Position numbers and translations under genes: made by a program. The notes beneath the pieces were generated by a model. It worked only from the letters and a program-made list of their open reading frames with translations. It was not told where the DNA came from and made no database searches. Shown here in pieces: positions 4,948 through 61,857 of a stretch of DNA of 64,000 bases. The stretch is from assembly GCA_037379345.1 (NCBI GenBank), contig CM074517.1, forward strand, positions 44,748,577-44,812,576, written 5' to 3'. Position 1 is the first letter of the stretch; every line of letters starts with the position of its first letter. This DNA is from Perna viridis (Eukaryota).

Positions 4948-7345
4948 AAGACGGCTACTTCAGTGTGCACCACATGATAGAGGTTATTTCCTCATAGTCT
5001 AGAAAACATAACAGTCATAACTTTAATAATCCAATTTGATGTAATAGAAAATAACCATTTATTGAAGTACCCTTCGTTATTCATATAAAACATGTAGTAC
5101 ACCACGATTGTCTCCCTTTTACCACATTAAAAACAACATTAATAAATACATAAAAAAATAAAATAAAAATAAAATAAAAAATATAACTGCGTAGGTTTCG
5201 TCAGTATGTTTTGTCAATAAACATCCAGGTGCTCTAACTGCATTGTAAACTGTTAAGAATTAAAGAAAAAAATGGCCGTCTTGATATAAATTGGAATTTA
5301 AGTACTTGATATTGTAGAGCGGGAATAAAAAAAATTATGGATCATAACCCTAAACTGTCATAAAATTCCTTAAAATTTGTTTTTAGACTACACTTCTTTT
5401 GTGTAATGATTCAGAAGCGTTTTAAATTACCTATTCTGGCGATCTTTGTACAGAGAACATGTTCTAGCGAGTTAATATTTTAACATTATCGTTTTTTAGT
5501 TTTAATAAAGATCTTAAGGAAATTGCATACAAAAGAGACCCCATCATGTTGGAGATGTACGACAGTTCCTTTATGAATAAATATTCTGCAAAGGCCAACT
5601 ATGATAATTGCTATGGATTTGGTTTCTATCTTCAACACATAGGTCAATCAAAATACATAGAAAGAACGTAACATTTAATGAAAGATGCTATAAAAGTCTT
5701 TATGAGGCTAAAATTGCACATATCGGCAAAAAAAAAATCATTATTAAAATCTTATGACTTATCTTGTCTTCCGCTCGCCTATAAAAGTCTACAAGCACAA
5801 ATTTTACGACAACTTTTCATTAGATACATTTATATATATTATTCTGCTGAATGGTGTATATGTTGTTCTGCTGAACACGTGTTTCAAAAAGTAACCTTCC
5901 ATTTGCAATATTAGAAGAAAATACTTAGAAAGATCGAAATCCAAAAATAAATTGCATACAAGTACAAAAACTATAAAGACAAAAACAGGAAGAAGCAGAA
6001 AATCAAAATGTTGACTTCTGCTGTTATAGTTAGAAAAGAACTTGATCAGCGTGACATACATAGAGATTTAGAAAAGGGGGCCTACATCGGTTTCCCAATA
6101 TCGGTTAGACCCAGCCTGATTTTAGGTAATAGTTTGATGACTGTGTTTATTTTGATAATTATAATATATATAATATACTGTATTCTGTATCTGTATGCAG
6201 ATTTGTATTTTTGAAAAAAAAAAAAAAACTTACGTTCATCACCCACTTAATCAACCAAACCAGAACGATAACTCTTGCAAAATGCGATTTTCAAGTACAA
6301 ACTATCTCAAAAGTGCAACTATCAATTGAATAAATACTAAGACTAGTCGTGTGGTCGATTTCTGAAAACGAAAGTAGCTTTTGCAGTACATGAATTACCT
6401 CAACCTTAATTTTATTTATAAAGTCTGCAACTTGATTCGTTTAGGTTTTTTTTTTCAGTTGTTCTATTCAGTTTTTTTTATATATACTCTATTACGTAGT
6501 CTTTTTATTATCCTCTACATTTCTCAGACAAACCTTTCTTTAAATGATATTGCATGAACAAATACATTTTAGAGCATACATATTGAAATCCTACTATTAG
6601 ATTCATCTACTCTTAATAGAACCGTGATTGTTCTACATTGATCAAAAACAACTTAAAGAGAAAAAGAGACATAGACAACAGACCAGAGGCTCCCAGGAGT
6701 CTGAATCGATCACTTGTTTCATTCGTTGCCTTTCAAGGTCAAGAACACTGACAAGTTGTCGTCCTACAACTTCCACTCATGGAGATTTTTGTAGGTCTTA
6801 TTGTAGATATCATTTCATCAATCGAATTATTTTTCTATCTATTATAGTTTCAAGATATTAGCAAAAATTAAACAAGTACCATCTTTAAAAAAATATACCC
6901 AACGCAGTAAAATTTTACTTTTAAGTTTCTACATTTCTTTCAAGAAAATAACACATGGCACGCAATTCAAATTTTCGATACAGTTTTTGAACGCTATTTC
7001 AAGTTTTCGATACCGTTTTTTTTAACCCCACTAAGTTACAGGTATTTGGCCAATCGGTAAACAGAATTGCGATCAGGTGACTTGCGTTCTCATAGAAGAG
7101 CGTCGAAAAAAAATCTCTTTTCGCATTTCAAGGGCAATGACTCTATCTAGAAGTAATCCTACAACTTCGATCAACTGGGGATGGATTTTTGTAGGATTTT
7201 CAAGACAAAGGAGGAAAGTGCACTTCATTTTTCTCTATCAGTCAGAGTTTTTGAGATATACCTTGAAATAAGTGGCTTTACCCCTAATAGTTAATAACAA
7301 AGACAAATAATTCTCAATTCTGTAGGTAAATTTATATTTTATTTA

Positions 7346-32709: not shown

Positions 32710-35427
32710 GAATGACTAGACTATCAATATTCATGTACATTAACTTTTAACTTTCTTATTGTTGTAACACAAAACTGACAAGGAAAAACACATTAAGTAC
32801 TACTCTGTCTACAAATCAGGCAAATATGTGTAAGGTGTGGCACATAAAAACAAACATACACACATAATCGTTTTGGTATTATCTAGGTATTTATACCTCA
32901 TAACCTTCAGAAATATCCATTGAAGTGCTTTTTAAAATTTGCGTTTTAAAGATATGATAGCTCAAATTTAGTTGTAAAATAATATGCAAAATGGTGGGAA
33001 AGGTTTTCCACTTTTTTCCTATATAAGGAATCAAAACGTCACAGATGCTTCATTATGATTTTAAAAAGTTTTTCAGTCGTTTTCTAGATGAATTTGAAGC
33101 AAACAAGAATAAATTGAGAAAAAGTATGTCCCACTCACTGCCCGATTCTAACACAAAATGATACATAAATTTCTTACAAAGACGAAATGCAACGAACTCT
33201 ACCTAAAACATCAGAGGTAGAAGAATAAATAGTTCCTTCTTTTTGTAAGACGCCTGCCCTCCTACCAAAATAAGGGTCGTGTCTGGTAAAGAATGATTAC
33301 TTGAAGTTTTTAGAAACTTTTAAAATTTCTTTGCATATATTAACTCTTTTATAACACCCCATATTTTCAAATATGACTTCTGTGATTGTTTTAAATATAT
33401 TTTAGTGATAAATATGTTTTCCGTCTTTCAGAACCTGTTGAATTGAACATGTTTTGAATGATGCTGGAATAATGTTATTAATTTATTTATCACAACTGTT
33501 AAAGACATAAGCACTACATTCGACGTCAGTTGGAGCCGGTTATTGATTTATCTATACATGTGTTCAATTATTATATTCCCTGGAGACGGAGTTATCTTTT
33601 ATTTTATTAGTTATGCATAGAATTTCAACATCAGTTCGTACGGGTATATTCTTTACGACAAATCCTACGGATTCCGCCATGTTTTATTGCTAAGTGTCGT
33701 TGTTCACAAATTCGATTGGTCAAATTTTAACTACTTAAATTATAGAAAGACGTCGTTTTATGATACGATTTAGCCGGTTGTTCAAAACAATTTGAACAAC
33801 GATAGGTATAAATTATCATATCATTCTCTATTTTACTTCCAATATGAATAGGTCGGACATTATTTGAAGCCGAGTATAATAGATGAATAAATTCCCTAAA
33901 CAATGTATGAAAGCATAATCCTCTGACAAATTATTTCCAACAGTATAATTACTGAGAAATTAAAAATTGATTGATCTACCTCCGTTCAAACCATTTTTCA
34001 ATTCGATAACTTTTTGTTGTAGCGAGTCACCAATGAGCGTCTAATCAAGTATTTAAAAGTATACATTAGTATTCACACAATAAGATGATTCTTATGGGCA
34101 TTTTTATTGTCTATGAGTATTAAAGCTTATCACGTTTGGATGACATGCTTTTAACAGGATATTAATTAAGCATACTGGTCTTATACTGTACTAACATGAC
34201 TTATTAATAACATACTGTTAGACCAACATGCTGACAATAATTGGAGATAGCAATGTTCATATCAGTCCTTTGATAAGAATACAAAGTATGAATACTATTT
34301 CGTCTTCAGTCATGTAAAGATTGTCTCCCACTTCTAAAAATGGAAAATGTGAATAGTACGAATGGTAGGAATAAATATCCTTACTGTCAATATTAATATT
34401 ATCAGATATGACAGAGTCGTTCAATGTAAATGTGTCAGCGCAAATGATACTTGTATGTGTCCCTTGTCTGTAAGCGAAGTTGAGTTTCGAAAACGACATA
34501 CAAAAGACATATCAAAACAAAGCGAAGAATGCTCGTCGATTTGATTCGTGCATGCAAATATTTGTTTTACATAATAGTTATATCTGTATAATTTTTATTG
34601 ATCTCATACTGGATATCAACTTATTAAAATTGGTAATCATTACGATAAATCATTAATTGATGTAGACATGGAGAAGATCTGGGTCAATAGATATTAGTGA
34701 ATTACCGACTATTTTCTGTAAAGATGCAGACTAATGCAAATGCTTTACATTAATATTTTTAAAGAATAATGTTAACGAATATATTTAAGGATTAATTCTT
34801 ATTTCTTGCAGCAGTTTATACTTGTAAACCGCTAAGGTGTAAACTGGTCCAAACTAGGTTATTGAGTATAACCTATTCAAATATTTGAAACATTCCTTAT
34901 AATTTAATTTCTAGTGTGTGAAAATCCAAACTGTGATTTTGTTTGTGAATATTTGAATTGCGGAGTGCGGACCAATCGACGGTAATGACGTTATAGTACC
35001 AAGTCAGGTTATACAAAATGAGAGAACCAACCAATTAGAAAGCTTGTTACAAAGTCAAATTAAATTACCCTAGGTTGAGTGTCGTTGTACGAATAAGGCA
35101 GGGGATGAATCATGGTACAAAAAATCCTACAGTTTTGATTTTAATTTGTCTATTTGCACGATCAGAATCAAGGGAAAAAACAAGATTTTCCGCATTACTC
35201 AGGTGAACTTGAGTCCTTATTTTTATTAAAATACACTGAAAATAAAAAAAAGAAAGAAATTTTAACATTTTTTGTTCTTTTGAAAAAATGTAGTTTTGTC
35301 AACAATGGAAATAAAATTCGGTCCATATTTATTTCTTCTTTTAATTTTGTATGATACCTAACAAACATATTTTTTTACAAAACAGAACGGCGTCTAAATT
35401 CTCTATTGTTGCAGTATCCGCGTCTTT

Positions 35428-36400
35428 TAAATGATGAGACCTGGATTTTGTTTCTACCTTGCCTATCATTTGAATGATGAGACCTGGATGTTGTTTCTAC
35501 CTTGCCTATCATTTGAATAATGAGACCTGGATGTTGTTTCTACCTTGCCTATCCTTTAAATGGTGAGACTGGATGTTGTTTCTACCTTGTCTATCATTTA
35601 AATGGTGAGACCTGGATGTTGTTTCTACCTTGTTTATCCTTTGAATGATGAGACCTGGATGTTGCTTCTACCTTGTCTATCCTTTGAATGATGAGACTTA
35701 GATGTTGCTTCTACCTTGTCTATCCTTTGAATGATGAGACCTGGATGTTGGTTCTACCTTGCCTATTCTTTGAACGATGAGACCTGGATGTTGGTTCTAC
35801 CTTGCCTATTCTTTGAATGATGCGACCTGGATGTTGTTTCTACCTTGCCTATCCTTTAAATGGTGAGACCTGGATGTTGTTTCTATCTTACCTATCCTTT
35901 GAATGATGAGACCTGGATGTTGTTTTTACTTTGCCTATCCTTTGAATGATGAGACCTGGATGTTGTTTCTACCTTGTCCATCCTTTGAATGGTGAGACCT
36001 GGATGTTGTTTCTACCTTGTCGATCCTTTGAATGATGAGACCTGGATGTTGTTTCTACCTTGTCGATCCTTTGAATGATGAGACCTGGATGTTGCTTCTA
36101 CCTTGTCTATCCTTTGAATGATGAGACCTGGATGTTGCTTCTACATTGCCTATTATTTGAATGATGAGACCTGGATGTTGTTTCTACCTTGTCTATCCTT
36201 TGAATGATGAGACCTGGATGTTGTTTCTACCTTGTCTATCCTTTGAATGATGAGACCTGGATGTTACTTCTACCTTGCCTATCCTTTGAATGATTAGAAT
36301 TGGCCGTCGCTTCAAACTTTCCTATTATATGAATGATGAGACTTTGATGTTGTTTCTGTCTTGCCTATTCTTGAATGATAAGACTGGGATGTCGCTTCTA
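35428..36400. repeat. 43-bp minisatellite, roughly 22 copies
   Basis: Unit GAATGATGAGACCTGGATGTTGTTTCTACCTTGCCTATCCTTT, head-to-tail with no spacers. Confidence 0.95.
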
Positions 36401-37167
36401 CTTTTCTAATCTCTGCATCTAACCTTGCTTATGTCTTCATAAAATATAACGGAACGCAGAACGTTTGTTTCCCCAGTACAGCTCTTAATACAAAGTTTTA
36501 ATGATATAATTATTTCTTAGCATGTCGTTAAATTAAATGAAAAGGATATTTTGTTCTTTTATAATGAACTTTTCACTTTTATCTTGGCAAATAATACCAC
36601 AATACAGTTTAAATTGAGTTCATTCCATAAGAAAAAATGAGATATGATAATAACAATGAACTCTTGATACAGTATTTTGGTGATAAAATTATTTCTAGGT
36701 GTGTCGTAAAAGTTAATGAAACAGTACTTTTTTGTTTTACATTGAAATATTTTACCTTTATGTTGACAAACAAACAAAACTAAAAAACAGTTTAAATTGA
36801 GTTCACTTCGTAAGAAAGAATGGGATTTGTAAATAACCTTGAACTTTTTGTTTGTTTTTTTTTTAATTATCTTTCTATATAAATTAAATTTAATCCACGT
36901 AAGTAAGATATTGTTATCTAAGTACCATATGTATATGCTCATTTCTAACTTTTCAGACGTTTTTCAGGGTTGATGACCTGAAAGATAAGTGGTCAGACAC
37001 ACTCTTTACCAGTAATAGGCAGAGAGACAGTTTCCCAGGTATGAGGGCGTTACGGGCCATAGTTAATATTTATAGAAAATTGACTTATAGAATATTGTTA
37101 ATTATTTGGCGTTTTTAAAAAACTATCCTGTACAAAAAAAAAAACAATACCAGTTGTAAATTTCGAT

Positions 37168-37211
37168 ATGCTGTACACATGTTTCAAGGAGTAACCTCAC
37201 ATCAGCAGCAT
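37168..37211 (-). ncRNA. Minimal type I hammerhead ribozyme, copy 1
   Basis: ATGCTG-CTGATGT-GAGG ttact CCTT-GAAAC atgt GTA-CAGCAT; perfect 6-bp stem I, one core substitution (A9>U). Confidence 0.75.
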
Positions 37212-37542
37212 TAAAATCAAATATGTAGGAAGATCATAATCAAAATATTACTTGTATACAAGAAGTACTCATAATCAAAACTATCGAAAGAGGAAGCCAA
37301 ATCCATCACCGAGTCTACCATATGCAATGAAAGGAATGAAGCTTCGGTGTTTTATGTATTTTAAAATTTGGAATGCTGGAAGATTTCATAAATAGGGTAG
37401 ATAAAATATATTATTCGGGGTCAGACAGGTCTGACTACTGGATTGATGAACACCCTCGGGGACCTCAGGTCCACCAGCAGTGGTATCGACCCAGTCGTTT
37501 TTCATATAAAAAATACCAGTTTTATATATTGTAAATTTCGAT

Positions 37543-37586
37543 TTGCTGTACACGTGTGTCAAGGAGTAACCTCTCATCAGCAGAAT
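37543..37586 (-). ncRNA. Minimal type I hammerhead ribozyme, copy 2
   Basis: TTCTG-CTGATGA-GAGG ttact CCTT-GACAC acgt GTA-CAGCA; GAAA>GACA substitution, palindromic ACGT loop III. Confidence 0.7.
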
Positions 37587-37925
37587 TAAAATCAAATATG
37601 TAGGAAGATTATAATCAAAATATTAGTTGTATACAAGAACTACTCATAACCAAAACTATCGAAAGAGGTAAACCCAATCAATCACCGAGAGGTTCTACCA
37701 TGTGCAATGAAAGGAATGAAGCTTCGGTGTTTTACGTATTTTAAAATTTGGAATGCGAGAAGATTTCATAAATAGGGTAGATAAAATATAATATTATTCG
37801 GGGTCAGACAGGTTTGACTACTGGATTGGTGAATACCCTCGGGGACCTCAGGTCCACCAGCAGTGGTATCGACCCAGTCGTTCTTAAATAAAAAAAATAC
37901 CAGTTTATATATTGTAAATGTCGAT

Positions 37926-37969
37926 ATGATGTACACATGTTTCAAGGAGCAACCTCTCATCAGCAGCAG
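37926..37969 (-). ncRNA. Minimal type I hammerhead ribozyme, copy 3
   Basis: TGCTG-CTGATGA-GAGG ttgct CCTT-GAAAC atgt GTA-CATCA; intact catalytic core, one stem I mismatch. Confidence 0.8.
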
Positions 37970-38149
37970 AAAGCATGATATATTCTAGTATACTACCCAT
38001 AATTTGTGAATACCACACTTTTGTCAAGCATAACCACCCTTTTTACATGAATACCACCATTTTGTCAAGGAGCCCATCCGCTCCAACTGGAGTTTGTTCT
38101 TATCATTTCCGTTCCACCCTGCACTTCTTATATTTCCGCCAAAACAAAA

Positions 38150-38440
38150 CAAAAAACAATCAGACATGATTTAAGCCCAGATATATGGTTTTCCATTGTC
38201 TCTTCTTTGGACCGTGTAGTGGCAGTATAGGTCTTAGTGAATGTTTTTATTCGTCTTCATATCATAGCAATAATTAATTGGATGTAATACTGTTTGCATA
38301 TAAAAAACAATGTTGTTTTGGGCTTTTTATGCTGGTACGACAACAAATTTGTCATGTATCGTAGACAATATTTTTGCTTTATTGGGGTCTGTGAAAACTG
38401 ATATGGCATTACACTCATTGACCTGCTTTAACTGTAACTT
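38150..38440 (-). mobile_element. Penelope-like RT remnant (counterpart of ~52820-53065 in duplication copy B)
   Basis: Shares TGTAGTGGCAGTATAGGTCTT and GGTACGACAACA...CATGTAT with 52860-53000 and 29980-30130. Confidence 0.7.
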
Positions 38441-40049
38441 AAAGTAAAAGTCTACTAATTGAAAGGCGGCTTGAAATGAATAACCTGATTGATCCGCTAT
38501 TTAGTAAGGACTACTTGATTACATACGCTAAACAAAATTAGAACCTTTCATACATTGGTTCACACTTGTTGCTGTCATTAATATCAAAGAGCAAGAAAAC
38601 CTAATGCTGTATTTTGATTTGTGGTAATTTGCTGCTGTGAAGATTCGAATATTCAACAGTATAATTGAAGCATAATTTCAAGTCAATGTTAAATTAAGTT
38701 ATGCTTACAGGACGCACTAAGAGAAATATAAATCTCACGTGCAGAGCATAATTGATCTCTAAATTTTAAATAAGAGAATCCAACACTAAAAATGCAACAA
38801 TCCTACATTATCTATTCTTTTGAGTTTATTAGTAGCATACGTTAGAACTAAGAAATCAGAGTTATTTTTATTTTTTTTTTTGCATTTTATCACAATGTCC
38901 TGTACAAGTTTTATTTAAGACTTAATTTAGTGTTATGCATTGTGTTTCCGTTTTTAAGCATTTTTGTCTTTATCTCAAAAAAATATTGTTGTGAAATTTA
39001 CGTTCATTGATTGATTGTAATTTTACGCCCATTGTCGGACAAATCATGAATTTCAGTGAGAGAGGGTTTGGTGAATCAAACAAATCCTGGGTTCTTATAG
39101 AATGACCCGATCGTTATAGTTTACAGAAGATAAAACCACCAGGAACATGATTAGCTGCATAACAGTTGGATAATTAAGATGGACATATGCATTAATGGTT
39201 TGTAGTCATAAGTAGAATTATCTTGGGCCCACAAACCGATTTAGAAAAGTAGTTACTAAACACCGTTAAGTGCATTCTTGACTGGAATACATAAAACGGT
39301 AAGGTCTTATTGGCAAAACCAAGCTATAAAGTAGATAGAATTATACCTATATTATCTCTCCGAATAATCCTTCATGGTTTGAAATCTTGTATGTAATTGG
39401 CTGATTTCTCATGTGACATTTAACCCAGGTATTACTAGTATAAAAGTCAATGGTTCACCATCATAACAGAGACGTTGATCTAATCGGCAAAAATTATGAA
39501 GGATGACATGTAACAAGCAATCCTTGTGAATTGTGGTATTGTCACTTACTTAACTAGTGTATAGTTCTGTAAGGTTAGTTTTATTTGTTTTTTCAATATT
39601 TAAAAAAATTTTTTTATGATATTCATGAAATCAGCTTCTTATCAGTAACGGAAACTTTTTTCAAATACGTTTTAGACCATTTTAGTTTAAACATAATGGT
39701 ATGTATTACTGGACAGATCTTTATTATCACTTTTAATTCCAATATTCAGAGAAAACCATTAAGCATAAAAAAATCTTTTTACCAGTTTAGAGTTTGAAAT
39801 TTAAAATATTTGAATGCATTAAAAATCTGTTAAGTCTAACAAAATGCAATTACCAAAATATTTGTGTTTATAATGAACATATGATGAATAAATCAAACAG
39901 AAGAAGCTGGAAAAATGTATGTTTTTTTCATTTTTTTATCTTTAATTTTTAAATTTAGAAATCTACATTTTCATTTATATTCAAAAGACAAAATGCAAAA
40001 CAAAACAAGTTTCTTCTTTTTCAAATGAAAACAAATAAAAAAGGATATC

Positions 40050-41405: not shown

Positions 41406-43034
41406 ATGGACATGTTTACATTGAGCGTTCTCTTATTGTGCATATTAAACAAGAATATGGCATTCAAATCTACAGAAAATGACCCAATTGAAAGGTATAC
41501 AAACATTTGTGGAAATCTATTGTGTTATGGAGATGAAATATATCGGGAGAAAAACGATAGTCTTCCATGGTTTTGTGAAAGATGTTCATGTTCATCTGAT
41601 TGTATTGTTAGGAAAAATTGTTGTATTGACTATTATTTCCGAATACCAGATAGAGTATGCAAAGGTGAGGTTTTCTCTTATCCACAAGGATATGACAAAA
41701 ATACAAAGAATGACAAGGCTGTGGAAGTCTCAAAGTTTTACAGTGTAGTAGAACATTGTCCAAGTAATATATCAAATAAAGATCAAAATCGATGCGCCGT
41801 TGATTTTGGTTTAAATGAAAAGCTAACGTCACTTCCAGTTACGTCATTGAAAACGCATCTCACTTATAAAAATATTCACTGTGCAGAATGTAATAATGAC
41901 TCCGATAACTATATGGATTGGAAACTTTCTTTTAGATGTATGAAAGAAATAGATTTCAATATTGTTAATTCTATTGACGACATGATAACTGTAAGTACCA
42001 AAAACAAATGTATTATCAGTACACTTGCAAACAATAAAATTGCATTTGAAAAGTGCAAAAAACGTCGACATGTAGCGATTACATCTTGCAATACGACTGG
42101 AACATGGAAAAATGAAGTTCATGCTATTGTACAAGCATGTGAAAGCATTGACCAATCAATTGGTATGTTTCAAAACATATTTTGCTATATCTGTAATCCT
42201 CCTACAGGAAAATTAGATGTCATAGTTACTTGTCTGCCAAACTCACCTTTTTATGATAAATGTACAGATACGTTGCAGGACGAAGCAACTTATCCATATA
42301 AAAATGTATATGCATATATGAATAATATCAATGAAAGCAATGAAATGATAACAAACATTATATATAATGGGACAAATGAACTGACATTTCATGAATTCCT
42401 TGTTTTTACTCGGTCTTGTTCTGAAGGTTATGTTCTAGGAGAGTCAGAGCCGAATGCTAATCCTTGGAGACAACCATTACAAGTCATTCCATTCCAGTAC
42501 AAAATCATATGTCGAAAGTTGGAGGTATTTAGTTTGTTTTATACAGAAGAACAATTACTTCAGGAAGCTTGGGAACGAAGGTGTATGGCAATACCTCCAC
42601 CTCCAGGAATCGATTTGACATGCTACGAGAAAAGAAATCTCAACCGTAACTGTAACGTACCGTCCTACATACCGGGTCATGAGACTTTGAAGGAGGCCTG
42701 TCTTTACTTAGAAGATAAAAAGCTTTTGGCTTACAAAGGGTATTATAATGTATTCTGCTACTGGTGTGATTATCCCTATGAATTACAGTATGACCTTTGT
42801 TTTCCTTCGCCCGACAGTTTTCCCCTTTATTATGACATAGAACCGTACAGATGTGAAGATGTTTTGCCTTCAGTATTGTCAGTGGAATTAGTAGCGTGTA
42901 CTGTGTGCAGTAATTTTGGACCTATTCCTGATGCTGGATACAGACGCATGTTTTCTTTATCGTCATACGAAAGAGCCATAGAAAGTAGAGTAGATGTGCA
43001 GTGTTTGGGCAATGGGTTGTATGATGAAATAAAG
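41406..43034 (+). CDS. Class B (Methuselah/adhesion-like) GPCR, exon 1: signal peptide and Cys-rich ectodomain
   Basis: 543 open codons; signal peptide; SMB-like CERCSCSSDC...CCID; repeated AC...(Y/F)xN(I/V)FCYxC motifs; phase-0 donor AAG|GTAAGA at 43034/43035. Confidence 0.85.
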
Positions 43035-43376
43035 GTAAGAAAGTCATGATTTACTGTATATACAATAAGATCGGGAATTACAAGTCAATTACCAATATTC
43101 TTTTTCTATTTGAATATAAAAGTATAAAATTCAGAGCAAGAGAGTTTATATTGCTATCAAAACAGAAAGAAATAACCGGATGTTAATGTATTATTATATC
43201 CCGGTAAATCGAGTTATACTCGAATTTTCGTTGATATCCAATGTAATTCATGTGTAACTTGTCATTGTGTTCACCTACAGCATTTTTTCTTCTAATCAAT
43301 GAAATATTTGTTTTTGTAAAAGATGAGTATATAAACTTAAAAACAAACCTTGAAGCCATACGACCAAGATATATTT

Positions 43377-43580: not shown

Positions 43581-44264
43581 AAATGCTTTACCGCCTGAAG
43601 TTGGTGAACTGCGATTTTAATATGGGACTTAATTTGGTGAATTCATTGTAGAAACCCATGCAAAGGGATTACAAAATCAACTTTACACAACTCGAATAAA
43701 GATCATGCAATAATGTTGACTGGTTAGGTTGAAATAAGAAAAAAAATGCTGTGGCTCCAACTTCATAAACTATTTATTATTAAAGAATTATACTTAAGTT
43801 ACATGTCATGTATACTTGTTCTGGATGTTTTCAACATACCCTTCTTTTCCGGTCATTTTGCACACTGATATAACTCATTACATTATATTATTGTTTTGAT
43901 TGAAATCCCTTCGACTTCGCCATTCTGCAATGGTCCATCTTCTGTCCAACTCTTCCAAATTTGTGATTTTGAAATTTATTCTGAATTTACTATAATTTAA
44001 AACGCCCATTTTACGCTAAATATTTCGTAGTAAAATCAACCAGTCAAGCGTAACCTTACCTTGAACCAATTACCGCATGAAAAACCGATTTTTGTGTAGA
44101 AGGAACGCGTGATATTTTTATAGGTTACTCTGTATTCTAAATATAGGAAAACAAATCCTTTTTTTCTGGTTAACAATTATTAAATAGCACATCACAGAGA
44201 AGTGGGTTTCATATAAAACAACGGCAGCGCCATGCTTGCCAGGATATTTTTTTTGTATCTAAAA

Positions 44265-44840
44265 GTGTATTTAAGGGAACCAAGGTTATACCGGTAATCA
44301 AAAGAATGTAATCCAGGAAAAAAGACCAGACATGGAAAACAGACACGCACAACAAAGAACATAGAGTAACTAAAATCATACATACAAAGTAACAAAAGCA
44401 AATGAGCAACTCGGACTCCAGTAAAAACAGGGAGCATGGACCAGGTGCACCGGTAGATTAAACGTCCTCTGCTTTTCTAGAAAAAACCCGCCGAGTGGCT
44501 CATAAAAAGTCAAGTCCGGGGTAGACAAACAAAGAAAGGGAAACTATGACACGTTGAACAAATCAGTTTTCATGGCGCAGTTGGACACACAGTAACGATC
44601 CACGAGTTTATGATGACGGCCATAAAACTTTTGTAGTGATGACTTCAATCTTGTAGCAAAATAACCCTGCTCCAGAACCCTATTTGTTAGAATTCTACCG
44701 CGATACAAAAAGTCTGCGTAGTCTAGGCAACCTCTGACCTAACGTATGCGTTGTGATATGAACACTCCATACACAGGTGCTGAAGGGATGTTGCCACAGA
44801 TGAAAGGAAAGTTGACAATTTTGAATGAAACGTCATCACA
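44265..44840 (-). mobile_element. Intronic Penelope-like (Naiad-type) 3' fragment
   Basis: Reverse complement of ~61245-61815 (IVNFPFICGNIPSAP region and 3' UTR). Confidence 0.82.
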
Positions 44841-45031
44841 TACAATCAAATACATTAATACCTATCAACATATCAGAAGAGCAGAATTTGCATCAATTAG
44901 AGAATTATCATTTATTGACATAAAAAAGTTTCTCACAATCAAAACCTTTAATTAATGATAAAATGATTTCAGAGAATTATCATTTAAATGATTCAGTACT
45001 TATTGTTATTTTCTATGTACTTTTGTTGCAG

Positions 45032-46579
45032 AAGTCGTGCAGAAACATACATTGCTATCCAGGAAAGGTGCTGCAAAATGGAGAATGCACCCCCTTGATT
45101 ATAGATTCTGTAAACCTTTGCTACAGGTATGCTGCTCATTTCAAAATCAACTTGATGGATACCAATTATTCAAAAGATGTCTCACAATTGATGAATATAT
45201 TTTTAGAGGGCATGCCCAACCATTTAGAAAACCAAATCAGTACATTATTTAGAGATAATGATAAGGAATTCTCTTATGTTATATCAAACTCTTCATGTGA
45301 CGGTGTTAATGATTACGTTACGGGCCATTATTACTTTCAGTTTTGTATTCCAACATTTGCAAAAAGGTTAGACATTGAAAAAACTCTCCTGAAAACGATT
45401 AATTCCTCATTCATCCTTAATGTTCAAAGTTTTATGCTAAATGTAGTACTAACAATGAGTGATGAGGCGTTTGATGCTCCAAATCTCATGCATGATGCAG
45501 CATTGACAGGAAAGTGTATACTTTATACACAGAACAAGCATATACAGAAAACTGTAACCTACTACCGTGTGAATGAACTTTTACTGTGCAAACAGGTAGA
45601 ATTTTATTTGAACCAGTACAGCGAGCTTCAAAATCGTTACATAAAAATATATAATGCAATGATAGGCCCGAATGATTATCTCAAGGTCAAGACCGGGGTG
45701 AGAATATGCACGGAAACATTTTTGCAACTTTTAGCATTAAGCCATCGTACGGACATTAATTTAATTCTATTTGGTATTAGAGTATTTTGTACGACGATGT
45801 CGTTAATTTGTTTACTATGCACTTTTATTACATACGTATTGTTTAAAAAGCTGCGAACATTACCTGGCGTAAACATTATGGTACTTGTACTTTGTTTAAT
45901 TTTAAATGCGGCTGTTTTCTATATACGGCTATTTGACGCCCCTAATGACACCTTTTGTATTCTTTATGGAATGTTACAACACTATTTCTTCCTGTGTTGT
46001 TTCACTTCGTTCAATATTTGCACATACCATATTTATCGAGTGTTTGCTTCAAAAAATATTATAAAGGCTGATCGAACATTCGGAACTCTATGCAAATATT
46101 TTATTTTTATTTTCTGCTTTCCAGCTCTTTTTGTAGCAGGTAACACTTTCATAACTCGTTATCTGTATGAACATAACTCAATCGGATACGGAGGTAAACA
46201 GTGCTTTATCATTCTGAAGGAAGGGGTTATTTATATGTTACTTTGTCCTATAAGCCTTATAATTTTTGTGAATATCTTTCTTTTTGTGGCTGCTTTCTGT
46301 CACATCTGTCGTACACCAAATTTTTCAAGCGACAATTCAACACGTGGAAAAAGAAATGACATCAATATTTTCATTAAACTATTAACTATTACTGGCTCTT
46401 CTTGGAGCTTTCAAATAATAGATTCATTTTTTCCTGAATCATTTTTTAGTGTTATAGTGTCAATGTGTAGTTTGCTTACAGGGGTATTCATATTTTTGTC
46501 CTATGTTTGCAATGAAAGAGTGTATAACATGTACAAGAAAACCATCTTTTGTTCAAGAGAGAAAGGGCCCGCCAACTAA
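45032..46579 (+). CDS. Class B GPCR, exon 2: remainder of ectodomain and 7TM domain
   Basis: Acceptor TTTTGTTGCAG| at 45031 is phase 0, giving ...YDEIK/KSCRNIHCYPGK; 7tm_2-type motifs LRTLPGVN, C...GMLQHYFFL, GYGGKQCFI, KLLTITGSSW, GVFIFLSYVC. Joined protein ~1058 aa. Confidence 0.88.
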   Translation, partial: KSCRNIHCYPGKVLQNGECTPLIIDSVNLCYRYAAHFKINLMDTNYSKDVSQLMNIFLEGMPNHLENQISTLFRDNDKEFSYVISNSSCDGVNDYVTGHYYFQFCIPTFAKRLDIEKTLLKTINSSFILNVQSFMLNVVLTMSDEAFDAPNLMHDAALTGKCILYTQNKHIQKTVTYYRVNELLLCKQVEFYLNQYSELQNRYIKIYNAMIGPNDYLKVKTGVRICTETFLQLLALSHRTDINLILFGIRVFCTTMSLICLLCTFITYVLFKKLRTLPGVNIMVLVLCLILNAAVFYIRLFDAPNDTFCILYGMLQHYFFLCCFTSFNICTYHIYRVFASKNIIKADRTFGTLCKYFIFIFCFPALFVAGNTFITRYLYEHNSIGYGGKQCFIILKEGVIYMLLCPISLIIFVNIFLFVAAFCHICRTPNFSSDNSTRGKRNDINIFIKLLTITGSSWSFQIIDSFFPESFFSVIVSMCSLLTGVFIFLSYVCNERVYNMYKKTIFCSREKGPAN

Positions 46580-49680: not shown

Positions 49681-51634
49681 TTGAGTGTAAATTTAGATAA
49701 TATATTGTATAACAATATACAAATGGTGGTACAAGTTTCCCACTTTTTTCCTGTATAAACAGTCAAAACATATCTACATCACAGATGCTTCAGGATAAAT
49801 TTTTAAAGTTTTTCAGTCGTTTTCTAGATGTATTTGAGGCAAAAATAAATAAATTGAGAAAAAAGTATTACCACGCATTGCCCGATTTTAATACAGAATG
49901 ATACTTAAAATCTTACAAAGACGAAATGCTACGAACTCGACCTAAACATCAGAGGTAGAAGAATAAACAGTTCCTTCTCTTTGTTAGGCGCCTGGCGTTG
50001 AATTCACAAAAATCGTCAGTGTGAAATTGATTGTAAATTATGAAATAAATGTTTTTTTCTGTTCTTACGTCATTACTTACGATCAACTTTCCTCTTACGA
50101 CTTTTTATGAATTCGACGCCCTCCTACCAAAATAAAGGTCGTGTCTTGTAAAGAATGATTATTTGAAGTTTTTAGCAATAAACTTCTAAAATTTCTTTGC
50201 GTGTATTAACTCTTTTATAACAGCTCATATTTCCAAATATGACTTGTGGGTTTGTGTAATAAATATTTTAGTGATGAGCATTTTTCAGTGTTTCAGAATG
50301 TGTTGAATGATACTGGAATAATGTTGTCATTAATTTATTTAGCTGTTAAACTGTTAAAGTCAAAATGACTATACTCAACGTTAGTTGGATCCAGCTATTG
50401 ATTTATTTGTTTTCAATTGTTCAATTACCTAGTGACAGAGTTATCTTTTATTCTATTTGTTATGCATAAAATCGCAACATCAGTACGTACGGTTTATATT
50501 CCTTACGACAAATCCTACGGAATTCTGCCATTTTATGTTGCTAAGCGTCGGTTGTTTACCAGTTTGATCGGTCCAATTTTAACTACATAAATTATAGGAA
50601 GTCGTCGTTTTATGATACGATTTAGATTGTTGTTCAGAACAATTTAAACAGCGATAGGTGACAAATAGCATGTCATTCTTTATTTTACTTCCAATTTGTA
50701 TATGTCAGACATTATTTGATGTCAATTATAATATATGAATAAATTTCCTTAACAATGTATTAAAGCTAAATCCTCTGACAAATCATTTCAAACAGTATAA
50801 TTACTGAGGAAATATAAATTGATTTATTTACCTCCGCTGAAGCCATATTACAATTTGATAAATTTTTATTGTAATGTGTCACCAATGAGCGGCGAATTAA
50901 GTATTTAAAAGTATATACTAGTATTCACACAATAAGATGATTCTTATGAACATTTTTATTGTCTATGAGTATTAAAGCATTAAAGCTTATCACATTTGCA
51001 TGGCATGCTTTTAACAGGATTAAGCATACTGGTATAATACTACACTAACATGTTTTATTAATGACACACTGTAAGAGAAACATGATGACAATTCTGCAAT
51101 AGTTGGAGAGAACAATGTTCATATCAGTCTTTTGATAAGAATACAAAATTTGAATACTGTTTTGTTCAATAATGTCCTCTTAAAGATACAGCCATGAAAA
51201 GATTGACTCTCATTTCTAAGAATGGAAAATGTGAATTGTACGAGATTAAGTGTATAAACAGTTCATATTCATTACCGTTGTTATTTAAAAAAAATATCCT
51301 ATCAGTTAAATTTCTATTGTGTGATTTTGTTTGTCCATATTTAAATTGCGGCGGGCGGACCAATCGACATTAATGACGTCATAGTACCAAGCCAGGTTAT
51401 AAAAAATAAGAGAACCAACCAATTAGAAAGCTTATTATAAATGAAATTAAATTATAAGGAAGTAACACTAGGTTGAGTGTCTCTGTACGAATAAGGCAGG
51501 GAATGAAACATGGTACAAAAACCCTCCATATTGAAAGTTTAATTTGACTATTTGCACCGTCAGAATCAAGGGAAAATACAAGATTTTCCGTATTATTTAG
51601 GTGAAATTAAGTTCTGATTTTATTAAAATACAGA

Positions 51635-54600
51635 GTAATTAAGGGAACCAAGATTCTAACGGAAATCAAAAGAACGCAATCCAGGGACAAAGACCAGAAA
51701 TGGAAACACAACAAAGAACATAGAATAACCAAAATAATACATACAAAGTATCAAAAATAAACTCGGACTCTCCTAAAAGCAATTTTGTAGCAATATTATT
51801 CTGTCCCAAAGGCCTAATTATTAGAAGTTTAGCGCGATATCAAGAATCTAAAGTTACGCAGAATTGTTATAAGAAAACTCCATACGCAGGAGCTGAAGGG
51901 ATGTTGCTTACACATAAAAGGAAAGTTGACAATACGGAATGAAAATTGATCGCGTGTGTCGTATAGTTTTCTTTTACCATCGATCTCTAAGTGTAGGACA
52001 AGATATGAGGCTGACTTCACAATGATTGTAGTATCCTTTATCTCAAGTTATAATGGGTAGATGCGATATATAAACTCCCTGGAATTAGGATTGTTTAACG
52101 ACAATACGTCATCTATATAGCAAAATCTGAGATGAAAGGATCTAGCTAAACGATGTTCTTTCTTTTGGATCAGACCAGCTATTAAGTGAGCTTCATAAGA
52201 ATGAAGGATTAGGTCAAGAAGTTGAGGATCACAATTCCTTCTCTTGAAATGCCGACCGTTTGTTGAAAAACACGCCCACCACTAACAAGATATTTTGTCA
52301 ATAAAAGAATTCAAGCATTTGAAAACATCTTCATTGGTTTATTTGGAAGATGTTTGAAATTTGTTTTTTTTTTCAAAGTATGTAGAACCTCTACCAATAA
52401 CTACATATTTGTATTTAGGAGTACCATTTTTTTTAGTAACAACGATGTATAATGCATTTGAGTCGGGATTTTAACTGAGTATTGGAATAGAAGTGTTAAG
52501 AGGTTAAACATTATAGGTATTACTTCTATTGTATTTTGATAATATTCTTGAGTTGAGGGTTTCCAGAAAATTTTTCGAATTTTTCAGGATCCATATTGAA
52601 TTAAAAACACCACGGGAGTAACAAGTGTCGTGGTAAGACTATTGACCCTCTTTGACAGCTGTGAGTATAGAAGTAAGAATTTTGAAAGAGGTTTGGTGGT
52701 ACATTTCACAGATCCAGTTGTGTAGCGTTGTTTGTATGGATGCTTGTGGAGTTTAGGAATCCAGTACATAGACGGTAGATCATAATCATCGTCGTTGTTA
52801 GAGAGACCAAAAGACGATAGCACAGATTTATGGTTTTCTACTGTCTCTTCTTTGGACACTGTAGTGGCAGTATAGGTCTTGTTACTGATATTTTTGCGTC
52901 TACATATGATAATAATCATTAATTAATACGGTATGCAAACAAAATAATGTTGTTTTGGACTTTGCCGGCGGGTACGACAACACATTTTTCATGTATAGTA
53001 GACAATGTTTTGGGGTTTGTGAAAACAGTTGTGATGTGGCATTACACTCATTTACCTACTTAAAGAGTAATCAAGGGAACCAAGGTTATAGCGGTAATCA
53101 AAAGAATGTAATCTGTTTGTCTAGAAACACCCGCCGAGTTGCTCGTAAAAAGTCAAATCCGGGGTAGACAAACGATTTGTTTCAAAATTAAAGACCTCAC
53201 GGCCTTGAACACTCTAACAGAGAATCAATGCCGTCTTGTTCTCGTTTTATCCATTTTCTTTCATAGTCCTCGACGGCATCCATAGGAACTTTAAAGTTAT
53301 AATTCCAATTGATGGAGCGTGGTTCACGGTACTTGGGATCGTTAGAAAGGATTTTACGCAGAGATTCGTTTTCGATGATGTAAATTTCCTGTAACGAGGT
53401 GACCAGAAGGGCCATATTTGAATGGAGAGTTTTTGCAAGAACAGTGAGGTGGTTTAGCCTTAAGTCCTCAATCTCGAGGTTCTGTAATAGCCTTTTATAA
53501 TCAAAAATTTTGGATGCAATATGTGAAGTATAGGAATATGAAATAATTGGTATGGATTTGTCTTTGAAATATGAGGAAATTTTTTTTGGGTAACGTTTTT
53601 GTGATGGAGGATGTTAGCCAAATTAATTGTATCTATATCTTTGTTGACAAACGGTAGTGGAATAAATGATCGTTTTCGTTCATCTGACTTTTCACACGAA
53701 CTGGTTTAAATAATCTGTGGAAACCAATATCCAAAATGATGGCTGTATAATGATGAAGTGGGTCAGAAACAGGATTGTCAAGACTTGTTTTGTAAAGGGA
53801 GTGTAGTAAAGTGAGAGGTAAAGAATAAAGTTCGGTTCTAATGTGATGAAATCCAAGAGGTTTTTGTATGAAAGGAAGGAGACCACCTATGGAGACATCA
53901 TGTAACTTACGTGACATATAGTGGCGATGGCCATGACTCCTTTGCCGCCTTGGATTTTTGTCAATTAAAGTCATCACATTTATGCTATTGTTATCTTGGC
54001 TTGAAAGGTTTCCTATACTTTTGATGTTGTCATTGCATCCGTAAGGTATTGCAGTACCTAGTCTGCGTATCCAGTACTCCTTTCTTCCCCTACGATAATT
54101 TTTACTTAGACCGGGACTGTTCGTAGGATTGTATTTTTTTTTCTAGAATACGAACTTTCATAGAGAGGATTGAATGATCTTGTTGATTAAAGTGTTGATA
54201 AACTGTCGGGAACGGTGGTGTTAATTCCCGAACGATGACCGCACATTATTTTGTTTAATCGTTCTTGCGTTTCTCCGACATATACTAAACCACATAAGTT
54301 GCATTCTAATCCATATATCATGTTTGTCGAATGCAACTTAAGTCATCGTGACTTCTTGTATGGAAGGTTTTGTTTGCAAAGAAACTGGAGAAGCAAGAGT
54401 CGGTTATAAGAATGTTGCATGTTTTGCAGTTTTTAATACCATATTTTGATATGGTACAATGTGGTTCATCATCGTTGTAGTCAAATATATCATTTAAAGT
54501 GATGGAACATGGTTTGATAATTTTAAAATAGTCAGAATTTTTGTACTGGAATAGATGGTCTGCAGACTGAACGTGTGATTGGATACTTTTAGTTGAATTG

Positions 54601-54704
54601 GTCGGGGCACTTTCCATTCCAGATGTGAGTGTGCTAAGATTCCCACCTGTGGACACCACATTCTTACAAGACAACAGAGTTTTAGGAAAGTTAGAACCTT
54701 TCAT
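51635..54704 (-). mobile_element. Near full-length degraded Penelope-like element with N-terminal GIY-YIG endonuclease (Naiad type)
   Basis: 5' to 3' on the minus strand: CKTC, IYGLECNLCGLVYVGET, EYWIRRLGTAIPYGCND (54420-54030); then PKYREP, YWIPKLHK, YIDD region, KSASYL.LHLEIDG; then 3' UTR. Confidence 0.88.
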
Positions 54705-55444
54705 ACATTAGTGCAACCTTGTTCCTGTCATTACTATCGAAGAGCAAGAAAACCTAATTTATTTTAAATTGTAGTAACTTGCCACTCTGCAGATTCTAAA
54801 ATTCAAAAACATAATTGAAACATAATTTTAATATTTTATTAAGTTATGCTTACAGGACGTACGAAGAGAAAGATAAACCTCAGGTGCAGAGCATAATTGA
54901 TCTCTAAATTTAATAAAAAATAGAATCCAACATTGACAACGCACTAATCCTACATTATCTATTCTTTCGATTTTATTAGTAGCATACGTTAAAACTAAGA
55001 AATCAATATTTGTTTTTATTTTCTCACGCTTTCTTGTACAAGTTTTATGTAAAAGTTAATTTAGTGTTGTGCATTGCGTTTCCATTTAATGCATGTTTGT
55101 CTCTGTCTCTAAAATTATTATTGTAAATTTATGTTCATTGATTAATTGTAATTTAACGTCCATTGTCAGACAAATCATGAATTTCAGTGCGAAAGGGTTT
55201 GGTCAATTAAACAAATCCTGGGTTCTAATAGAACGACCCGATCGTTATAATTTACAGAAGCAGAAACCAACAGGCACAGAATGACCTGAATAATAGTTGA
55301 ATAATTAAAATGGCAGACCACAGAACATATTCATTAATGGTTTGTAGTCATTAGTAGAATTATCTTAATTATTAATTAGAATTATAAATGATTTTAGAAA
55401 AGTGATTGCTAGATGCCCGTAAGTGCAGTCTTGACTGGAATGCA

Positions 55445-60774: not shown

Positions 60775-61818
60775 TTGTACCTAGATACAAATATATAGTT
60801 CTTGGTAGGGATTCCTCATACTTTGTAAGAAATAATTCCAAATCATCTTCCAAATATACAGAGAAAGATGTTTACAAAATGCTGGAATTTTTAATCGACA
60901 ACATATTTGTCCAGTGTGGTGGACGTGTTTTTCAACAAACGGTCGGCATTCCAATGGGAACAAATTGTGCTTCTTTACTTGCTGACTTTTCCTTCACTCT
61001 TATGAGGCTGACTTTTTAGCTGATCTGATCAGAAAGAAAGAATATCGTTTGGCTAGATCCTTTAATTTCAGTTTCCGCTATATAGATCACAAATTATCTT
61101 TAAACAATCCTAATTTCGGGGATTTGATACATCGCATCTACCCAAAAGAACTTGAGATAAAGGATACTACAGACACTGTGAAGTCAGCCACATATCTTGA
61201 CTAACACTTAGAAATCGATGGTAAAGGAAAACTTTACGACAAACGTGATGACTTTTCATTCAGAATTGTCAACTTTCCTTTCATCTGTGGCAACATCCCT
61301 TCGGCTCCTGCGTATGGAGTGTTCATATCACAACTCATACGTTATGCAAGAACTTGCCGAAACTACGTAGACTTTTTGTATCGCGCTAGAACTCTAACAA
61401 ATAGGCTTCTGGAACAGGGTTATGTTGCTACAAGATTGAAGTCATCACTACAGAAGTTTTATGGTCGTCATCATGAACTCGTGGATCGTTATGGTGTATC
61501 CATCAGCTCCATGAAAACTGATTTATTCAACGGGTCATAGTTTTCCTTTCCTCGTTTTCTACCCCGGACTTGACTTTTTATGAGCAACTCGGCGGGTGTT
61601 TCTAGAAAAGCAGGGGACGCTTACCCCACCGGTGCACCTGGTCCATGCTCCCAGTTTTAAGTGAAGTCCGAGTTGCTCATTTACTTTTGTTACTTCGTAT
61701 GTATGATTTTAGTTACTTTATGTTCTTTGTTGTGTATGTCTGTTTTCCATGTCTGGTCTTTGTCCCTGGATTACATTCTTTTGATTACCGCTATAACCTT
61801 GGTTCCCTTGATGACTCT
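60775..61818 (+). mobile_element. Penelope-like (Naiad-type) element: 3' half of RT plus 3' UTR
   Basis: LEFLIDNIFV...FQQTVGIPMGTNC, FRYID, IYPKELEI, YDKRDDF, ISQLIRYAR...KFYGRHHEL; no GIY-YIG domain follows the RT. Confidence 0.9.
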
Positions 61819-61857
61819 TGAATAAGTTCAGATGTATATATATGATGCCTTTATATA

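What the first reader, a model, noticed from the sequence alone, without database searches (positions are those of the whole stretch)
37140..37970. Tandem hammerhead-ribozyme array (retrozyme) beside Penelope-like RT sequence
Three minus-strand motifs 375 and 383 bp apart give the consensus ATGCTG CUGAUGA GAGG-loop-CCUU GAAAC A(C/U)GU GUA^CAGCAU. This is a minimal type I hammerhead with a tiny, near-palindromic stem III, the form known to cleave as dimers in Penelope elements and animal non-LTR retrozymes. Each copy has a different lesion and the consensus is intact. Cleavage would release a ~380-nt non-coding monomer able to circularise. The ORF track gives no sign of it, and it lies ~200 bp from a Naiad remnant, a plausible source of RT in trans.
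Basis: partly seen in the sequence, partly recalled or inferred. Interest (0 to 1): 0.8.

Follow-up and report, generated by a model that had tools for sequence, protein, structure and literature searches.

The report
Dead mussel-type hammerhead retrozyme copy
This is a decayed copy of a small non-coding mobile element that carries a self-cleaving hammerhead RNA motif in every ~380-base unit, a kind already described in mussels, so the locus is ordinary, though the family shares a 63-base leader with a Naiad-type Penelope element in the same genome.

Summary
Window 37154-37966 is a 2.1-copy tandem with a 383-bp period. It carries three minus-strand hammerhead motifs whose cleavage sites lie 383 and 375 bp apart, and each motif has a different lesion.

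The unit is a dispersed repeat with at least 3,321 first-look candidates in the 723-Mb genome. In 51 sampled motifs the majority sequence has an intact hammerhead with an 8-nt palindromic stem III. The genome holds 169 exact copies of the intact 32-nt core, against 0 for the control pattern.

Stems I and II covary across four hammerhead-bearing repeat families of this genome. A natural HHR-unit-HHR transcript folds into a double hammerhead. Contigs of probable RNA runs from four studies cover only the repeat and read the intact core letters at this locus's lesions.

A 60-nt central domain matches the published Mytilus galloprovincialis retrozyme. I therefore read this as a new member of a known kind, and this copy is dead.

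Insertions have a fixed 3' end about 48 nt past the cleavage site, variable 5' truncation and a partial-tandem layout, as Penelope-like elements do. The domain that follows that terminus is also the 5' leader of a young, abundant Naiad family.

The adjacent Naiad remnant is real but its position is incidental. The scan had already noted the family and the Naiad link elsewhere in this genome (s1-751559, s1-751517).

The parts
37128..37985 (-). Whole insertion: an 84-nt 5'-truncated unit (hammerhead A plus tail), then two full units, ending at the family's fixed 3' terminus. The boundaries are good to about 10 nt.
   Evidence: TRF array; blast of an intact unit against the window; sequence reading
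37926..37969 (-). Hammerhead A. The core is intact. Stem I has a C.U mismatch (37966/37929) and has lost its sixth pair. A CpG has decayed to TpG in stem III.
   Evidence: the scanner passes it only with stem I relaxed to 2 bp; 41.9 bits
37543..37586 (-). Hammerhead B. The core lesion is GAAA to GACA (C at 37558). Stem I also has two mismatches (37584 and 37543).
   Evidence: 42.4 bits
37168..37211 (-). Hammerhead C. The core lesion is CUGAUGA to CUGAUGU (U at 37199). Stem I is a perfect 6 bp.
   Evidence: 58.8 bits
37549..37931 (-). Unit 1, 383 nt from cleavage site to cleavage site.
   Evidence: 90.1% identical to an intact genomic unit over positions 1-383
37174..37548 (-). Unit 2, 375 nt from cleavage site to cleavage site.
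   Evidence: 89.3% identical to an intact genomic unit
37819..37881 (-). Conserved 63-nt domain in unit 1. It is shared with the Naiad 5' leader and with the Mytilus retrozyme.
37436..37498 (-). Conserved 63-nt domain in unit 2.
37128..37173 (-). 3' tail after hammerhead C. It ends at the family's fixed insertion terminus and has a 9-nt internal deletion relative to other units.
38174..38431 (-). Neighbouring dead Naiad fragment from the RT N-terminal region, with the DKA motif. It is context, not part of the element.
   Evidence: DKA criterion from PMC8557442

Best explanation
Window ~37128-37985 (minus strand) is one old, inactivated insertion of a ~383-nt non-coding, non-autonomous retroelement of the animal non-LTR retrozyme class. 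It is homologous to the retrozymes described in Mytilus.

How the family works:
- Each unit carries a minimal type I hammerhead: a 6-bp open stem I that extends into a long helix closing the unit, a 4-bp stem II, and a 2-bp stem III inside the 8-nt palindrome ACACGUGU.
- A single motif has almost no stem III. Two motifs in one transcript, or in two transcripts, pair through the palindrome into a double hammerhead.
- Each motif then cleaves after GUA. This releases a unit-length RNA whose ends are held together by the extended stem I.
- By analogy with Mytilus, a host RNA ligase closes it into a circle.

New genomic copies are made by a Penelope-like reverse transcriptase acting in trans. Insertions have a fixed 3' end about 48 nt past the cleavage site, a variable 5' truncation, and a truncated copy in front of a full one. 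This is the partial-tandem layout typical of Penelope-like elements.

What is shown: the motif, its genome-wide intactness, helix covariation, the predicted double-hammerhead fold, the insertion anatomy, the homology to Mytilus, and the leader shared with Naiad.

What is inferred: cleavage, circularisation, the identity of the RT, and that the covering contigs are RNA.

In this locus all three hammerheads are damaged, so the copy is a fossil.
For: - **Array and motifs:**
- **Dispersed family:** 3,321 first-look candidates, with the 40 scored places spread across many chromosomes.
- **Intact majority:** 51 sampled motifs, of which 23 pass a full descriptor. The genome holds 169 exact intact 32-nt cores against 0 for the reversed control.
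- **Covariation over four families:** 93.4% of cells are paired, against 17-56% when the partners are slid. Six pairs change on both sides. No shuffle out of 500 reached the observed score.
- **Folding:** the dimer is -33.7 kcal/mol against -23.0 for two monomers. The MFE of a natural 447-nt HHR-unit-HHR transcript pairs the two palindromes and forms both stem II hairpins. The linear monomer folds at z = -2.56 with its ends paired.
- **Insertion anatomy in 29 loci:** the 3' end falls at unit position 44-52 in 25 of them, while the 5' start is variable.
- **Probable RNA contigs:** four studies cover 37156-37970 but not the unique flanks. They read A at 37199, A at 37558 and U at 37543 on the minus strand, that is, the intact core and stem I.
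- **Published relative:** the Mytilus retrozyme construct Mg353 has the same layout, a palindromic stem III (ACGCGCGU) and the same ~60-nt domain about 53 nt after the cleavage site. Northern blots there show abundant circles of 350-400 nt.
Against: - Rfam's hammerhead models give no hit at E up to 10, on the window or on an intact copy.
- No cleavage or circle was observed here. All runs are assembled contigs, their RNA status is a guess, and no molecule ends or strand could be read.
- No target-site duplications appear above control.
- The fixed 3' end lies 48 nt beyond the cleavage site. The RT template is therefore not simply the cleaved linear monomer.
- Stem II closes with a G.U pair at 10.1/11.1, which is atypical for hammerheads.
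- No autonomous element carrying this hammerhead was found.
Confidence: 0.8

Rival explanations
1. The family is a linear SINE-like passenger of Naiad and not a circle-forming retrozyme. It would be transcribed from the Naiad-type leader to the fixed 3' end as a unit-length linear RNA and copied by the Naiad RT. The hammerhead would then trim the 3' tail or be a passenger.
For: - The linear element defined by insertion termini begins within about 5 nt of the 63-nt domain, which is also the 5' leader of an abundant Naiad family.
- The 3' terminus is 48 nt past the cleavage site, not at it.
- The layout of a truncated copy before a full copy is the ordinary Penelope-like partial tandem and needs no circular template (PMC8557442).
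Against: - The homologous Mytilus elements accumulate mostly as circles (PMC7229834).
- The hammerhead is as well kept as any other part of the unit: 3.2% divergence from the majority against 5.6% for the body.
- The retrozyme's 3' part shows no similarity to the Naiad 3' module (score 20 against a shuffle mean of 20.2).

The two models are not exclusive.
Confidence: 0.12
2. The array is a piece of the pseudo-LTR of an autonomous hammerhead-bearing Penelope-like element, not a separate non-autonomous family.
For: - Canonical Penelope-like elements carry minimal hammerheads in their pseudo-LTRs (PMC8557442).
- A canonical element with a C-terminal endonuclease and a long open frame exists in this genome (L072).
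Against: - The flanks of 29 copies are unrelated to one another and contain no RT.
- No hammerhead lies within 1.5 kb of 30 GIY-YIG loci, by descriptor or by covariance model.
- The unit has only spurious ORFs of 64-69 aa.
Confidence: 0.04
3. This is an ordinary satellite or tandem repeat spread by recombination, and the hammerhead-like motif is a chance resemblance.
For: - Rfam is negative.
- Stem III is only 2 bp in a monomer.
Against: - The core pattern is never seen in shuffles.
- There are compensatory changes in stems I and II across four families.
- Copies are dispersed, with a fixed 3' end and 5' truncation.
- The family is homologous to an experimentally cleaving Mytilus element.
Confidence: 0.03

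Closest known systems
Mytilus galloprovincialis non-LTR retrozymes (Cervera and de la Pena 2020, NAR, PMC7229834; construct Mg353)
   Same: - Unit size: 350-390 bp there, 375-383 bp here.
- Thousands of copies.
- One type I hammerhead per unit, with no loop 1/loop 2 contacts.
- An 8-nt palindrome at stem III.
- The same ~60-nt central domain, placed 53-55 nt after the cleavage site. About 51 of 55 positions are identical outside a small hairpin whose stem changes on both sides (GGACC/GGUCC here, GGAGA/UCUCC there). This comparison was made by eye.
   Different: - The hammerhead sequence differs: stem I AUGCUG/CAGCAU, stem II GAGG/CCUU with a G.U closing pair, the palindrome ACACGUGU and the cleavage triplet GUA. 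Mytilus has stem II GUCU/AGAC, the palindrome ACGCGCGU and the triplet GUC.
- The rest of the unit is not obviously alignable.
- No experimental data exist for this species.
Axolotl Ax353 retrozyme and newt satellite 2 hammerheads (dimeric type I hammerheads)
   Same: The GAAAC-ACGU-GUA segment is identical to Ax353. Stem III is too short for a monomer, so the motif is expected to act as a double hammerhead. PMC7229834 shows this for axolotl.
   Different: The elements are unrelated outside the motif and come from a different phylum. That paper describes invertebrate retrozyme hammerheads as mostly efficient without dimerising, so this family looks more like the vertebrate type.
Naiad Penelope-like elements (Craig et al. 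2021, PMC8557442)
   Same: - A fixed 3' terminus with 5' truncation.
- A partial-tandem layout.
- A 63-nt segment placed directly after the 3'-terminal module at the junction: 84-90% identity, local alignment score 78 against 12.3 +/- 1.9 for shuffles.
   Different: - Naiads encode an EN-RT protein and lack canonical hammerheads. None was found here either.
- The Naiad 3' module of 127 nt has no similarity to the retrozyme's hammerhead-bearing 3' part.
Vertebrate non-LTR retrozymes as pseudo-LTR derivatives of Penelope-like elements (Li, Clavereau, Pollet 2026, bioRxiv 10.64898/2026.07.22.740005)
   Same: It shares the general claim that animal retrozymes share terminal sequence with Penelope-like elements of the same genome and depend on them.
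   Different: There the relatives are hammerhead-bearing Neptune and Poseidon pseudo-LTRs in Xenopus. Here the shared piece is the leader of a hammerhead-less Naiad in a mollusc.

Membership tests
Hammerhead ribozyme, type I (minimal, Penelope-like-element type) | Conserved catalytic core: CUGANGA, GAAA and a UH cleavage triplet in the right order and spacing | tested here: met
   The core is intact in the family majority, in 169 exact genomic copies and in window copy A. Window copies B (GACA) and C (CUGAUGU) fail it.
Hammerhead ribozyme, type I (minimal, Penelope-like-element type) | Three helices around the core, with stem I open, supported by compensatory change | tested here: met
   93.4% of cells are paired, and stems I and II have 6 pairs with changes on both sides across four families. 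Slid controls give 17-56%. Stem III is invariant, so it says nothing either way.
Hammerhead ribozyme, type I (minimal, Penelope-like-element type) | Detection by the curated Rfam covariance models (Hammerhead_1 and relatives) | tested here: not met
   No hammerhead hit at the gathering threshold or at E up to 10, on the window or on an intact copy. In the literature, minimal variants with a 2-bp stem III are found with structural descriptors, not with these models (PMC8557442 methods).
Hammerhead ribozyme, type I (minimal, Penelope-like-element type) | Site-specific self-cleavage | not testable with these tools
   Only folding predictions are available: the double hammerhead is favoured by 10.7 kcal/mol and appears in the MFE of a natural transcript.
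Animal non-LTR retrozyme | Short (150-450 bp) non-coding repeats in tandem, each with a type I hammerhead, in many dispersed copies | tested here: met
Animal non-LTR retrozyme | Expressed as unit-length linear and circular RNA | tested here: inconclusive
   Contigs of probable RNA runs from four studies cover the repeat only and carry intact cores. The runs are contigs whose RNA status is a guess, and no ends or circle junctions can be read on a tandem reference.
Animal non-LTR retrozyme | Sequence homology to a described retrozyme | tested here: met
   A ~60-nt domain and the overall layout match the Mytilus Mg353 construct. The comparison was by eye, because the published sequence has no reference in the tools.
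Animal non-LTR retrozyme | Target-site duplications when present | tested here: inconclusive
   The longest shared word between flanks averages 5.5 nt, against 5.4 nt for mismatched flank pairs.
Non-autonomous derivative of a Penelope-like element | Shares terminal sequence with an autonomous element of the same genome | tested here: inconclusive
   The 5' side is met: the 63-nt Naiad leader is present in 40 of 40 scored Naiad copies. The 3' side, the usual criterion, is not met for Naiad. No hammerhead-bearing autonomous partner was found.
Non-autonomous derivative of a Penelope-like element | Fixed 3' end, 5' truncation and a partial-tandem (pseudo-LTR-like) arrangement | tested here: met
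   The same anatomy holds for the Naiad family.

The most novel reading that the evidence does not exclude
Mussel-type retrozymes may be chimeras built on the Naiad chassis. The linear element defined by its insertion termini starts with the Naiad 5' leader, a conserved 63-nt hairpin domain that sits directly after the 3'-terminal module in both elements. It ends with a hammerhead module that Naiads lack.

If so, the hammerhead-less and most abundant bivalve Penelope-like clade would be the mobiliser. The leader would be the shared cis element, either a promoter or the signal for the template jump that creates partial tandems. The hammerhead would be an add-on that gives the passenger a stable circular form.
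Probability: 0.35. Interest if true: 0.6.

Novelty: new member of a known kind. Interest (0 to 1): 0.33.

Why it matters
The locus itself is a fossil and changes nothing. The family adds a second bivalve example of ribozyme-bearing retrozymes, with a hammerhead of the dimer-dependent type so far stressed for amphibians.

Two family-level facts bear on the open question of who mobilises animal retrozymes and from which RNA form:
- The insertion terminus lies 48 nt past the cleavage site.
- The next 63 nt equal the leader of a young Naiad family, and the same domain occurs in the published Mytilus retrozyme.

Both facts are directly testable with mussel RNA and with existing Mytilus genomes.

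Tried and rejected
- **Rfam scans** at gathering and at E up to 10, on the window and on an intact copy, gave no hammerhead hit, only chance snoRNA-like matches.
- **Target-site duplications:** no signal above control.
- **tRNA origin or Pol III B box.** The domain contains GGGTCGATACC, which resembles a B box. ARAGORN finds no tRNA in the unit or in the Naiad locus, and Rfam finds none, so I dropped the idea.
- **Search for an autonomous hammerhead-bearing partner.** A descriptor scan and a covariance model over 30 GIY-YIG loci with 1.5-kb flanks found nothing. 8 kb upstream of four loci of the second hammerhead family showed no RT frame.
- **3' similarity.** The Naiad 3' module against the retrozyme 3' part showed no similarity.
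- **Paper search** for literal domain strings returned only irrelevant primer hits.
- **Naiad tandem junctions.** The Naiad layout rests on L074, L066, the window's own copies and coordinate tables.
- **Mytilus sequence.** It exists only in a paper's supplement, so I compared it by eye and did not put it into any tool.
- **Contig joints that 'go back'** 358 or 746 bases with 13-14 extra letters recur in three or four runs. On a tandem reference with many diverged copies I cannot interpret them.

Full report
**Observation**

Tandem Repeats Finder reports one array at window 37154-37966 with period 383, 2.1 copies and 91% matches. Three hammerhead-like motifs lie on the minus strand.

- Motif A (37969-37926) keeps CUGAUGA, GAAA and GUA. 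It has a C.U mismatch in stem I and has lost the sixth pair.
- Motif B (37586-37543) reads GACA where GAAA is required, and has two stem I mismatches.
- Motif C (37211-37168) reads CUGAUGU, with a perfect 6-bp stem I.

The cleavage sites are 383 and 375 bp apart. A strict core pattern matches once in the window and never in 100 shuffles. A structure-aware scanner found nothing in 30 shuffles.

**Family**

The unit is a dispersed repeat. A search of the window's own 723-Mb assembly gave 3,321 first-look candidates. The 40 scored places lie on many chromosomes at 87-92% identity.

In 51 motifs taken from 29 loci, every position of the core and helices is in the majority at 90% or more. The majority sequence is an intact hammerhead: stem I AUGCUG/CAGCAU, stem II GAGG/CCUU with loop UUACU, then GAAAC, ACGU and GUA. 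23 of the 51 motifs pass a full descriptor. The genome holds 169 exact copies of the intact 32-nt core and none of the reversed control.

Thirty full units are on average 91.6% identical to one another, with a maximum of 97.6%. Divergence from the majority is similar along the unit: hammerhead 3.2%, domain 4.4%, tail 4.7%, body 5.6%. The family is therefore middle-aged, and individual copies such as this one decay roughly neutrally.

**Is the motif a hammerhead?**

Rfam says no. There is no hammerhead hit at gathering or at E up to 10, on the window or on an intact copy. Other evidence says yes.

A core-only pattern, with no helices required, recovered further repeat families in this genome that carry CUGAUGA...GAAAC-AYGU-GUC. 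I aligned these with the present family and counted pairs under the hammerhead structure:
- 93.4% of cells are paired, against 17-56% when partners are slid.
- Six pairs in stems I and II change on both sides.
- None of 500 shuffles reaches the observed covariation score.

A covariance model built from that alignment finds the three window motifs at 58.8, 42.4 and 41.9 bits. It finds nothing in 30 Penelope-like loci.

Stem III is only A-U and C-G around a 4-nt loop, but it lies in the 8-nt palindrome ACACGUGU. Two 64-nt motifs cofold at -33.7 kcal/mol against -23.0 for two monomers. The minimum-energy fold of a natural 447-nt HHR-unit-HHR transcript pairs the two palindromes and forms both stem II hairpins and both stems I, which is a double hammerhead. 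The 383-nt monomer folds with its two ends paired by a long extension of stem I (z = -2.56).

**Expression**

Seventeen runs that are probably RNA hold 7-13% of the array's 31-mers. Their assemblies total 36-105 million letters, against 658-934 million for the DNA holders.

Contigs of four runs from four studies, laid at 85% likeness, cover 37156-37970. They leave the unique flanks 36928-37098 and 38011-38124 empty.

At the window's lesions the contigs overwhelmingly read the intact letters on the minus strand:
- A at 37199
- A at 37558
- U at 37543

These are contigs, and their RNA status is a guess. No molecule ends, strand or circle junction can be read, so expression is probable but not shown.

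**Known relatives**

Cervera and de la Pena (PMC7229834) described about 5,000 type I hammerheads in 350-390-bp repeats of Mytilus galloprovincialis. They showed cleavage in vitro and abundant circles on northern blots.

Their Mg353 construct has a palindromic stem III (ACGCGCGU). About 53 nt after the cleavage site it has a ~60-nt stretch that matches units here at about 51 of 55 positions outside a small hairpin. That hairpin's stem differs on both sides while staying paired. This comparison was by eye.

The GAAAC-ACGU-GUA segment here is identical to the axolotl Ax353 hammerhead, which that paper shows must act as a dimer. The element is thus a member of a described kind and is homologous to the mussel family. 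The species is probably a bivalve related to Mytilus, which is my inference only.

**Insertion anatomy**

I counted positions from the cleavage site. 25 of 29 insertions end at unit position 44-52. Their 5' starts scatter from 104 to 356, or fall inside the hammerhead.

The layout is a 5'-truncated copy followed by a full copy. This is the partial tandem typical of Penelope-like elements (PMC8557442).

The window array is an 84-nt truncated copy plus two full copies.

The sample was chosen for full units, so it says nothing about how common single truncated copies are.

No target-site duplications stand out.

The fixed terminus lies 48 nt beyond the cleavage site, so the RT template is not simply the cleaved monomer. 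It could be a circle primed at one place or an uncleaved linear RNA.

**The Naiad neighbour and the Naiad link**

Window 38174-38431 (minus strand) is 78% identical to part of L074. L074 is an element with an N-terminal GIY-YIG domain followed by an RT whose DKG motif reads DKA, which is the Naiad signature.

The fragment is 260 bp long and carries a stop and a frameshift. The other 29 retrozyme loci have unrelated flanks. The adjacency is therefore incidental, and this fragment cannot supply RT.

Naiads are reported to lack canonical hammerheads, and I found none near 30 GIY-YIG loci.

The 63-nt conserved domain of the retrozyme (unit positions 52-114) does recur in the Naiad family:
- Identity is 84-90%, with a local alignment score of 78 against 12.3 +/- 1.9 for shuffles.
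- In the Naiad the domain sits between a 127-nt module and the first ATG of the EN-RT frame.
- The 127-nt module is the Naiad 3' terminus. Solo copies end there, with variable upstream extent into the RT C-terminus.
- Full copies carry the module in front of the leader as well.
- All 40 scored Naiad copies contain the domain, at 94-96% identity, out of 1,258 candidates. They include head-to-tail arrays with a 3.41-kb period.

In both elements the domain is therefore the first thing after the 3' terminus at the tandem junction. The two 3' modules are unrelated. The domain is predicted to form a long hairpin. Within this genome that hairpin has no compensatory changes.

Two earlier notes of this scan on other DNA of the same genome reached the same link (s1-751559, s1-751517). 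I reached it before reading them.

**Verdict**

The locus is a dead copy of a mussel-type retrozyme, a new member of a known kind.

The most interesting open reading is that these retrozymes ride on the Naiad chassis. It rests on a shared leader and a shared anatomy. It is weakened by the unrelated 3' ends and by the lack of any functional test.

Noticed in passing
L052:969-2499 (G000:C1:47448268-47449798) and L053:728-863: There are tandem arrays with a 45-bp period, 34 copies and 3 copies. Each unit is essentially the hammerhead alone: an intact 32-nt core plus 13 nt, with stem I reduced to about 2 bp. They look like a hammerhead-only minisatellite derived from the retrozyme by deletion of the whole body.
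   Followed up: partly
L032-L047 (e.g. L033:1492-1540, L032:1492-1541, L043:1492-1541, L047:1492-1541): At least three further low-copy repeat families carry hammerheads with the same GAAAC-AYGU palindrome, but with GUC and different stems I and II. 8 kb upstream of four of them shows no RT frame, so they also look non-autonomous.
   Followed up: partly
window 5875-5962 (-) and 72-121 (-): Two older relics of the same retrozyme family lie here, at 76-79% identity to the hammerhead end of the unit. The covariance model finds them at 27.6 and 24.2 bits.
   Followed up: yes
window 61694-61819 (+), 44262-44388 (-), 51632-51747 (-), 53062-53113 (-): These are copies of the 127-nt 3'-terminal module of the Naiad family, each followed by unrelated sequence. 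The first lies just after the stretch that another note calls a structured RNA in the Naiad 3' UTR.
   Followed up: partly
G000:C3:46029867-46081659 and G000:C6:47135379-47151405: These are head-to-tail arrays of the Naiad family: at least 16 copies with a 3.41-kb period on C3 and 4 copies with a ~5.1-kb period on C6, at 95-97% identity to L074. They were seen only as coordinates, and the sequence was not read.
   Followed up: no
L072:1468-3225 (-): [quoted passage not shown] The genome search reports 897 aa open. No hammerhead lies in the 1.47 kb downstream.
   Followed up: partly
window 38535-39200 and 54687-55342: A ~660-bp repeat (81% identity) sits directly upstream of a Naiad fragment at both places, where the leader domain would be expected. 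It may be an alternative Naiad 5' region or a recurrent insertion.
   Followed up: no
window 35426-36401 and 38008-38069: The first stretch is a 43-bp minisatellite with 22.7 copies at 89% matches. The second is a 20-bp repeat with 3 copies, lying between the array and the Naiad fragment. Neither contains a hammerhead core.
   Followed up: no
window 41406-43049 (+) and 44963-46579 (+): These are long open frames: a cysteine-rich 547-aa frame with no Pfam hit, and a 538-aa frame with a secretin-family 7TM domain (E = 1.4e-14). They are probably exons of a host receptor gene downstream of the array.
   Followed up: partly
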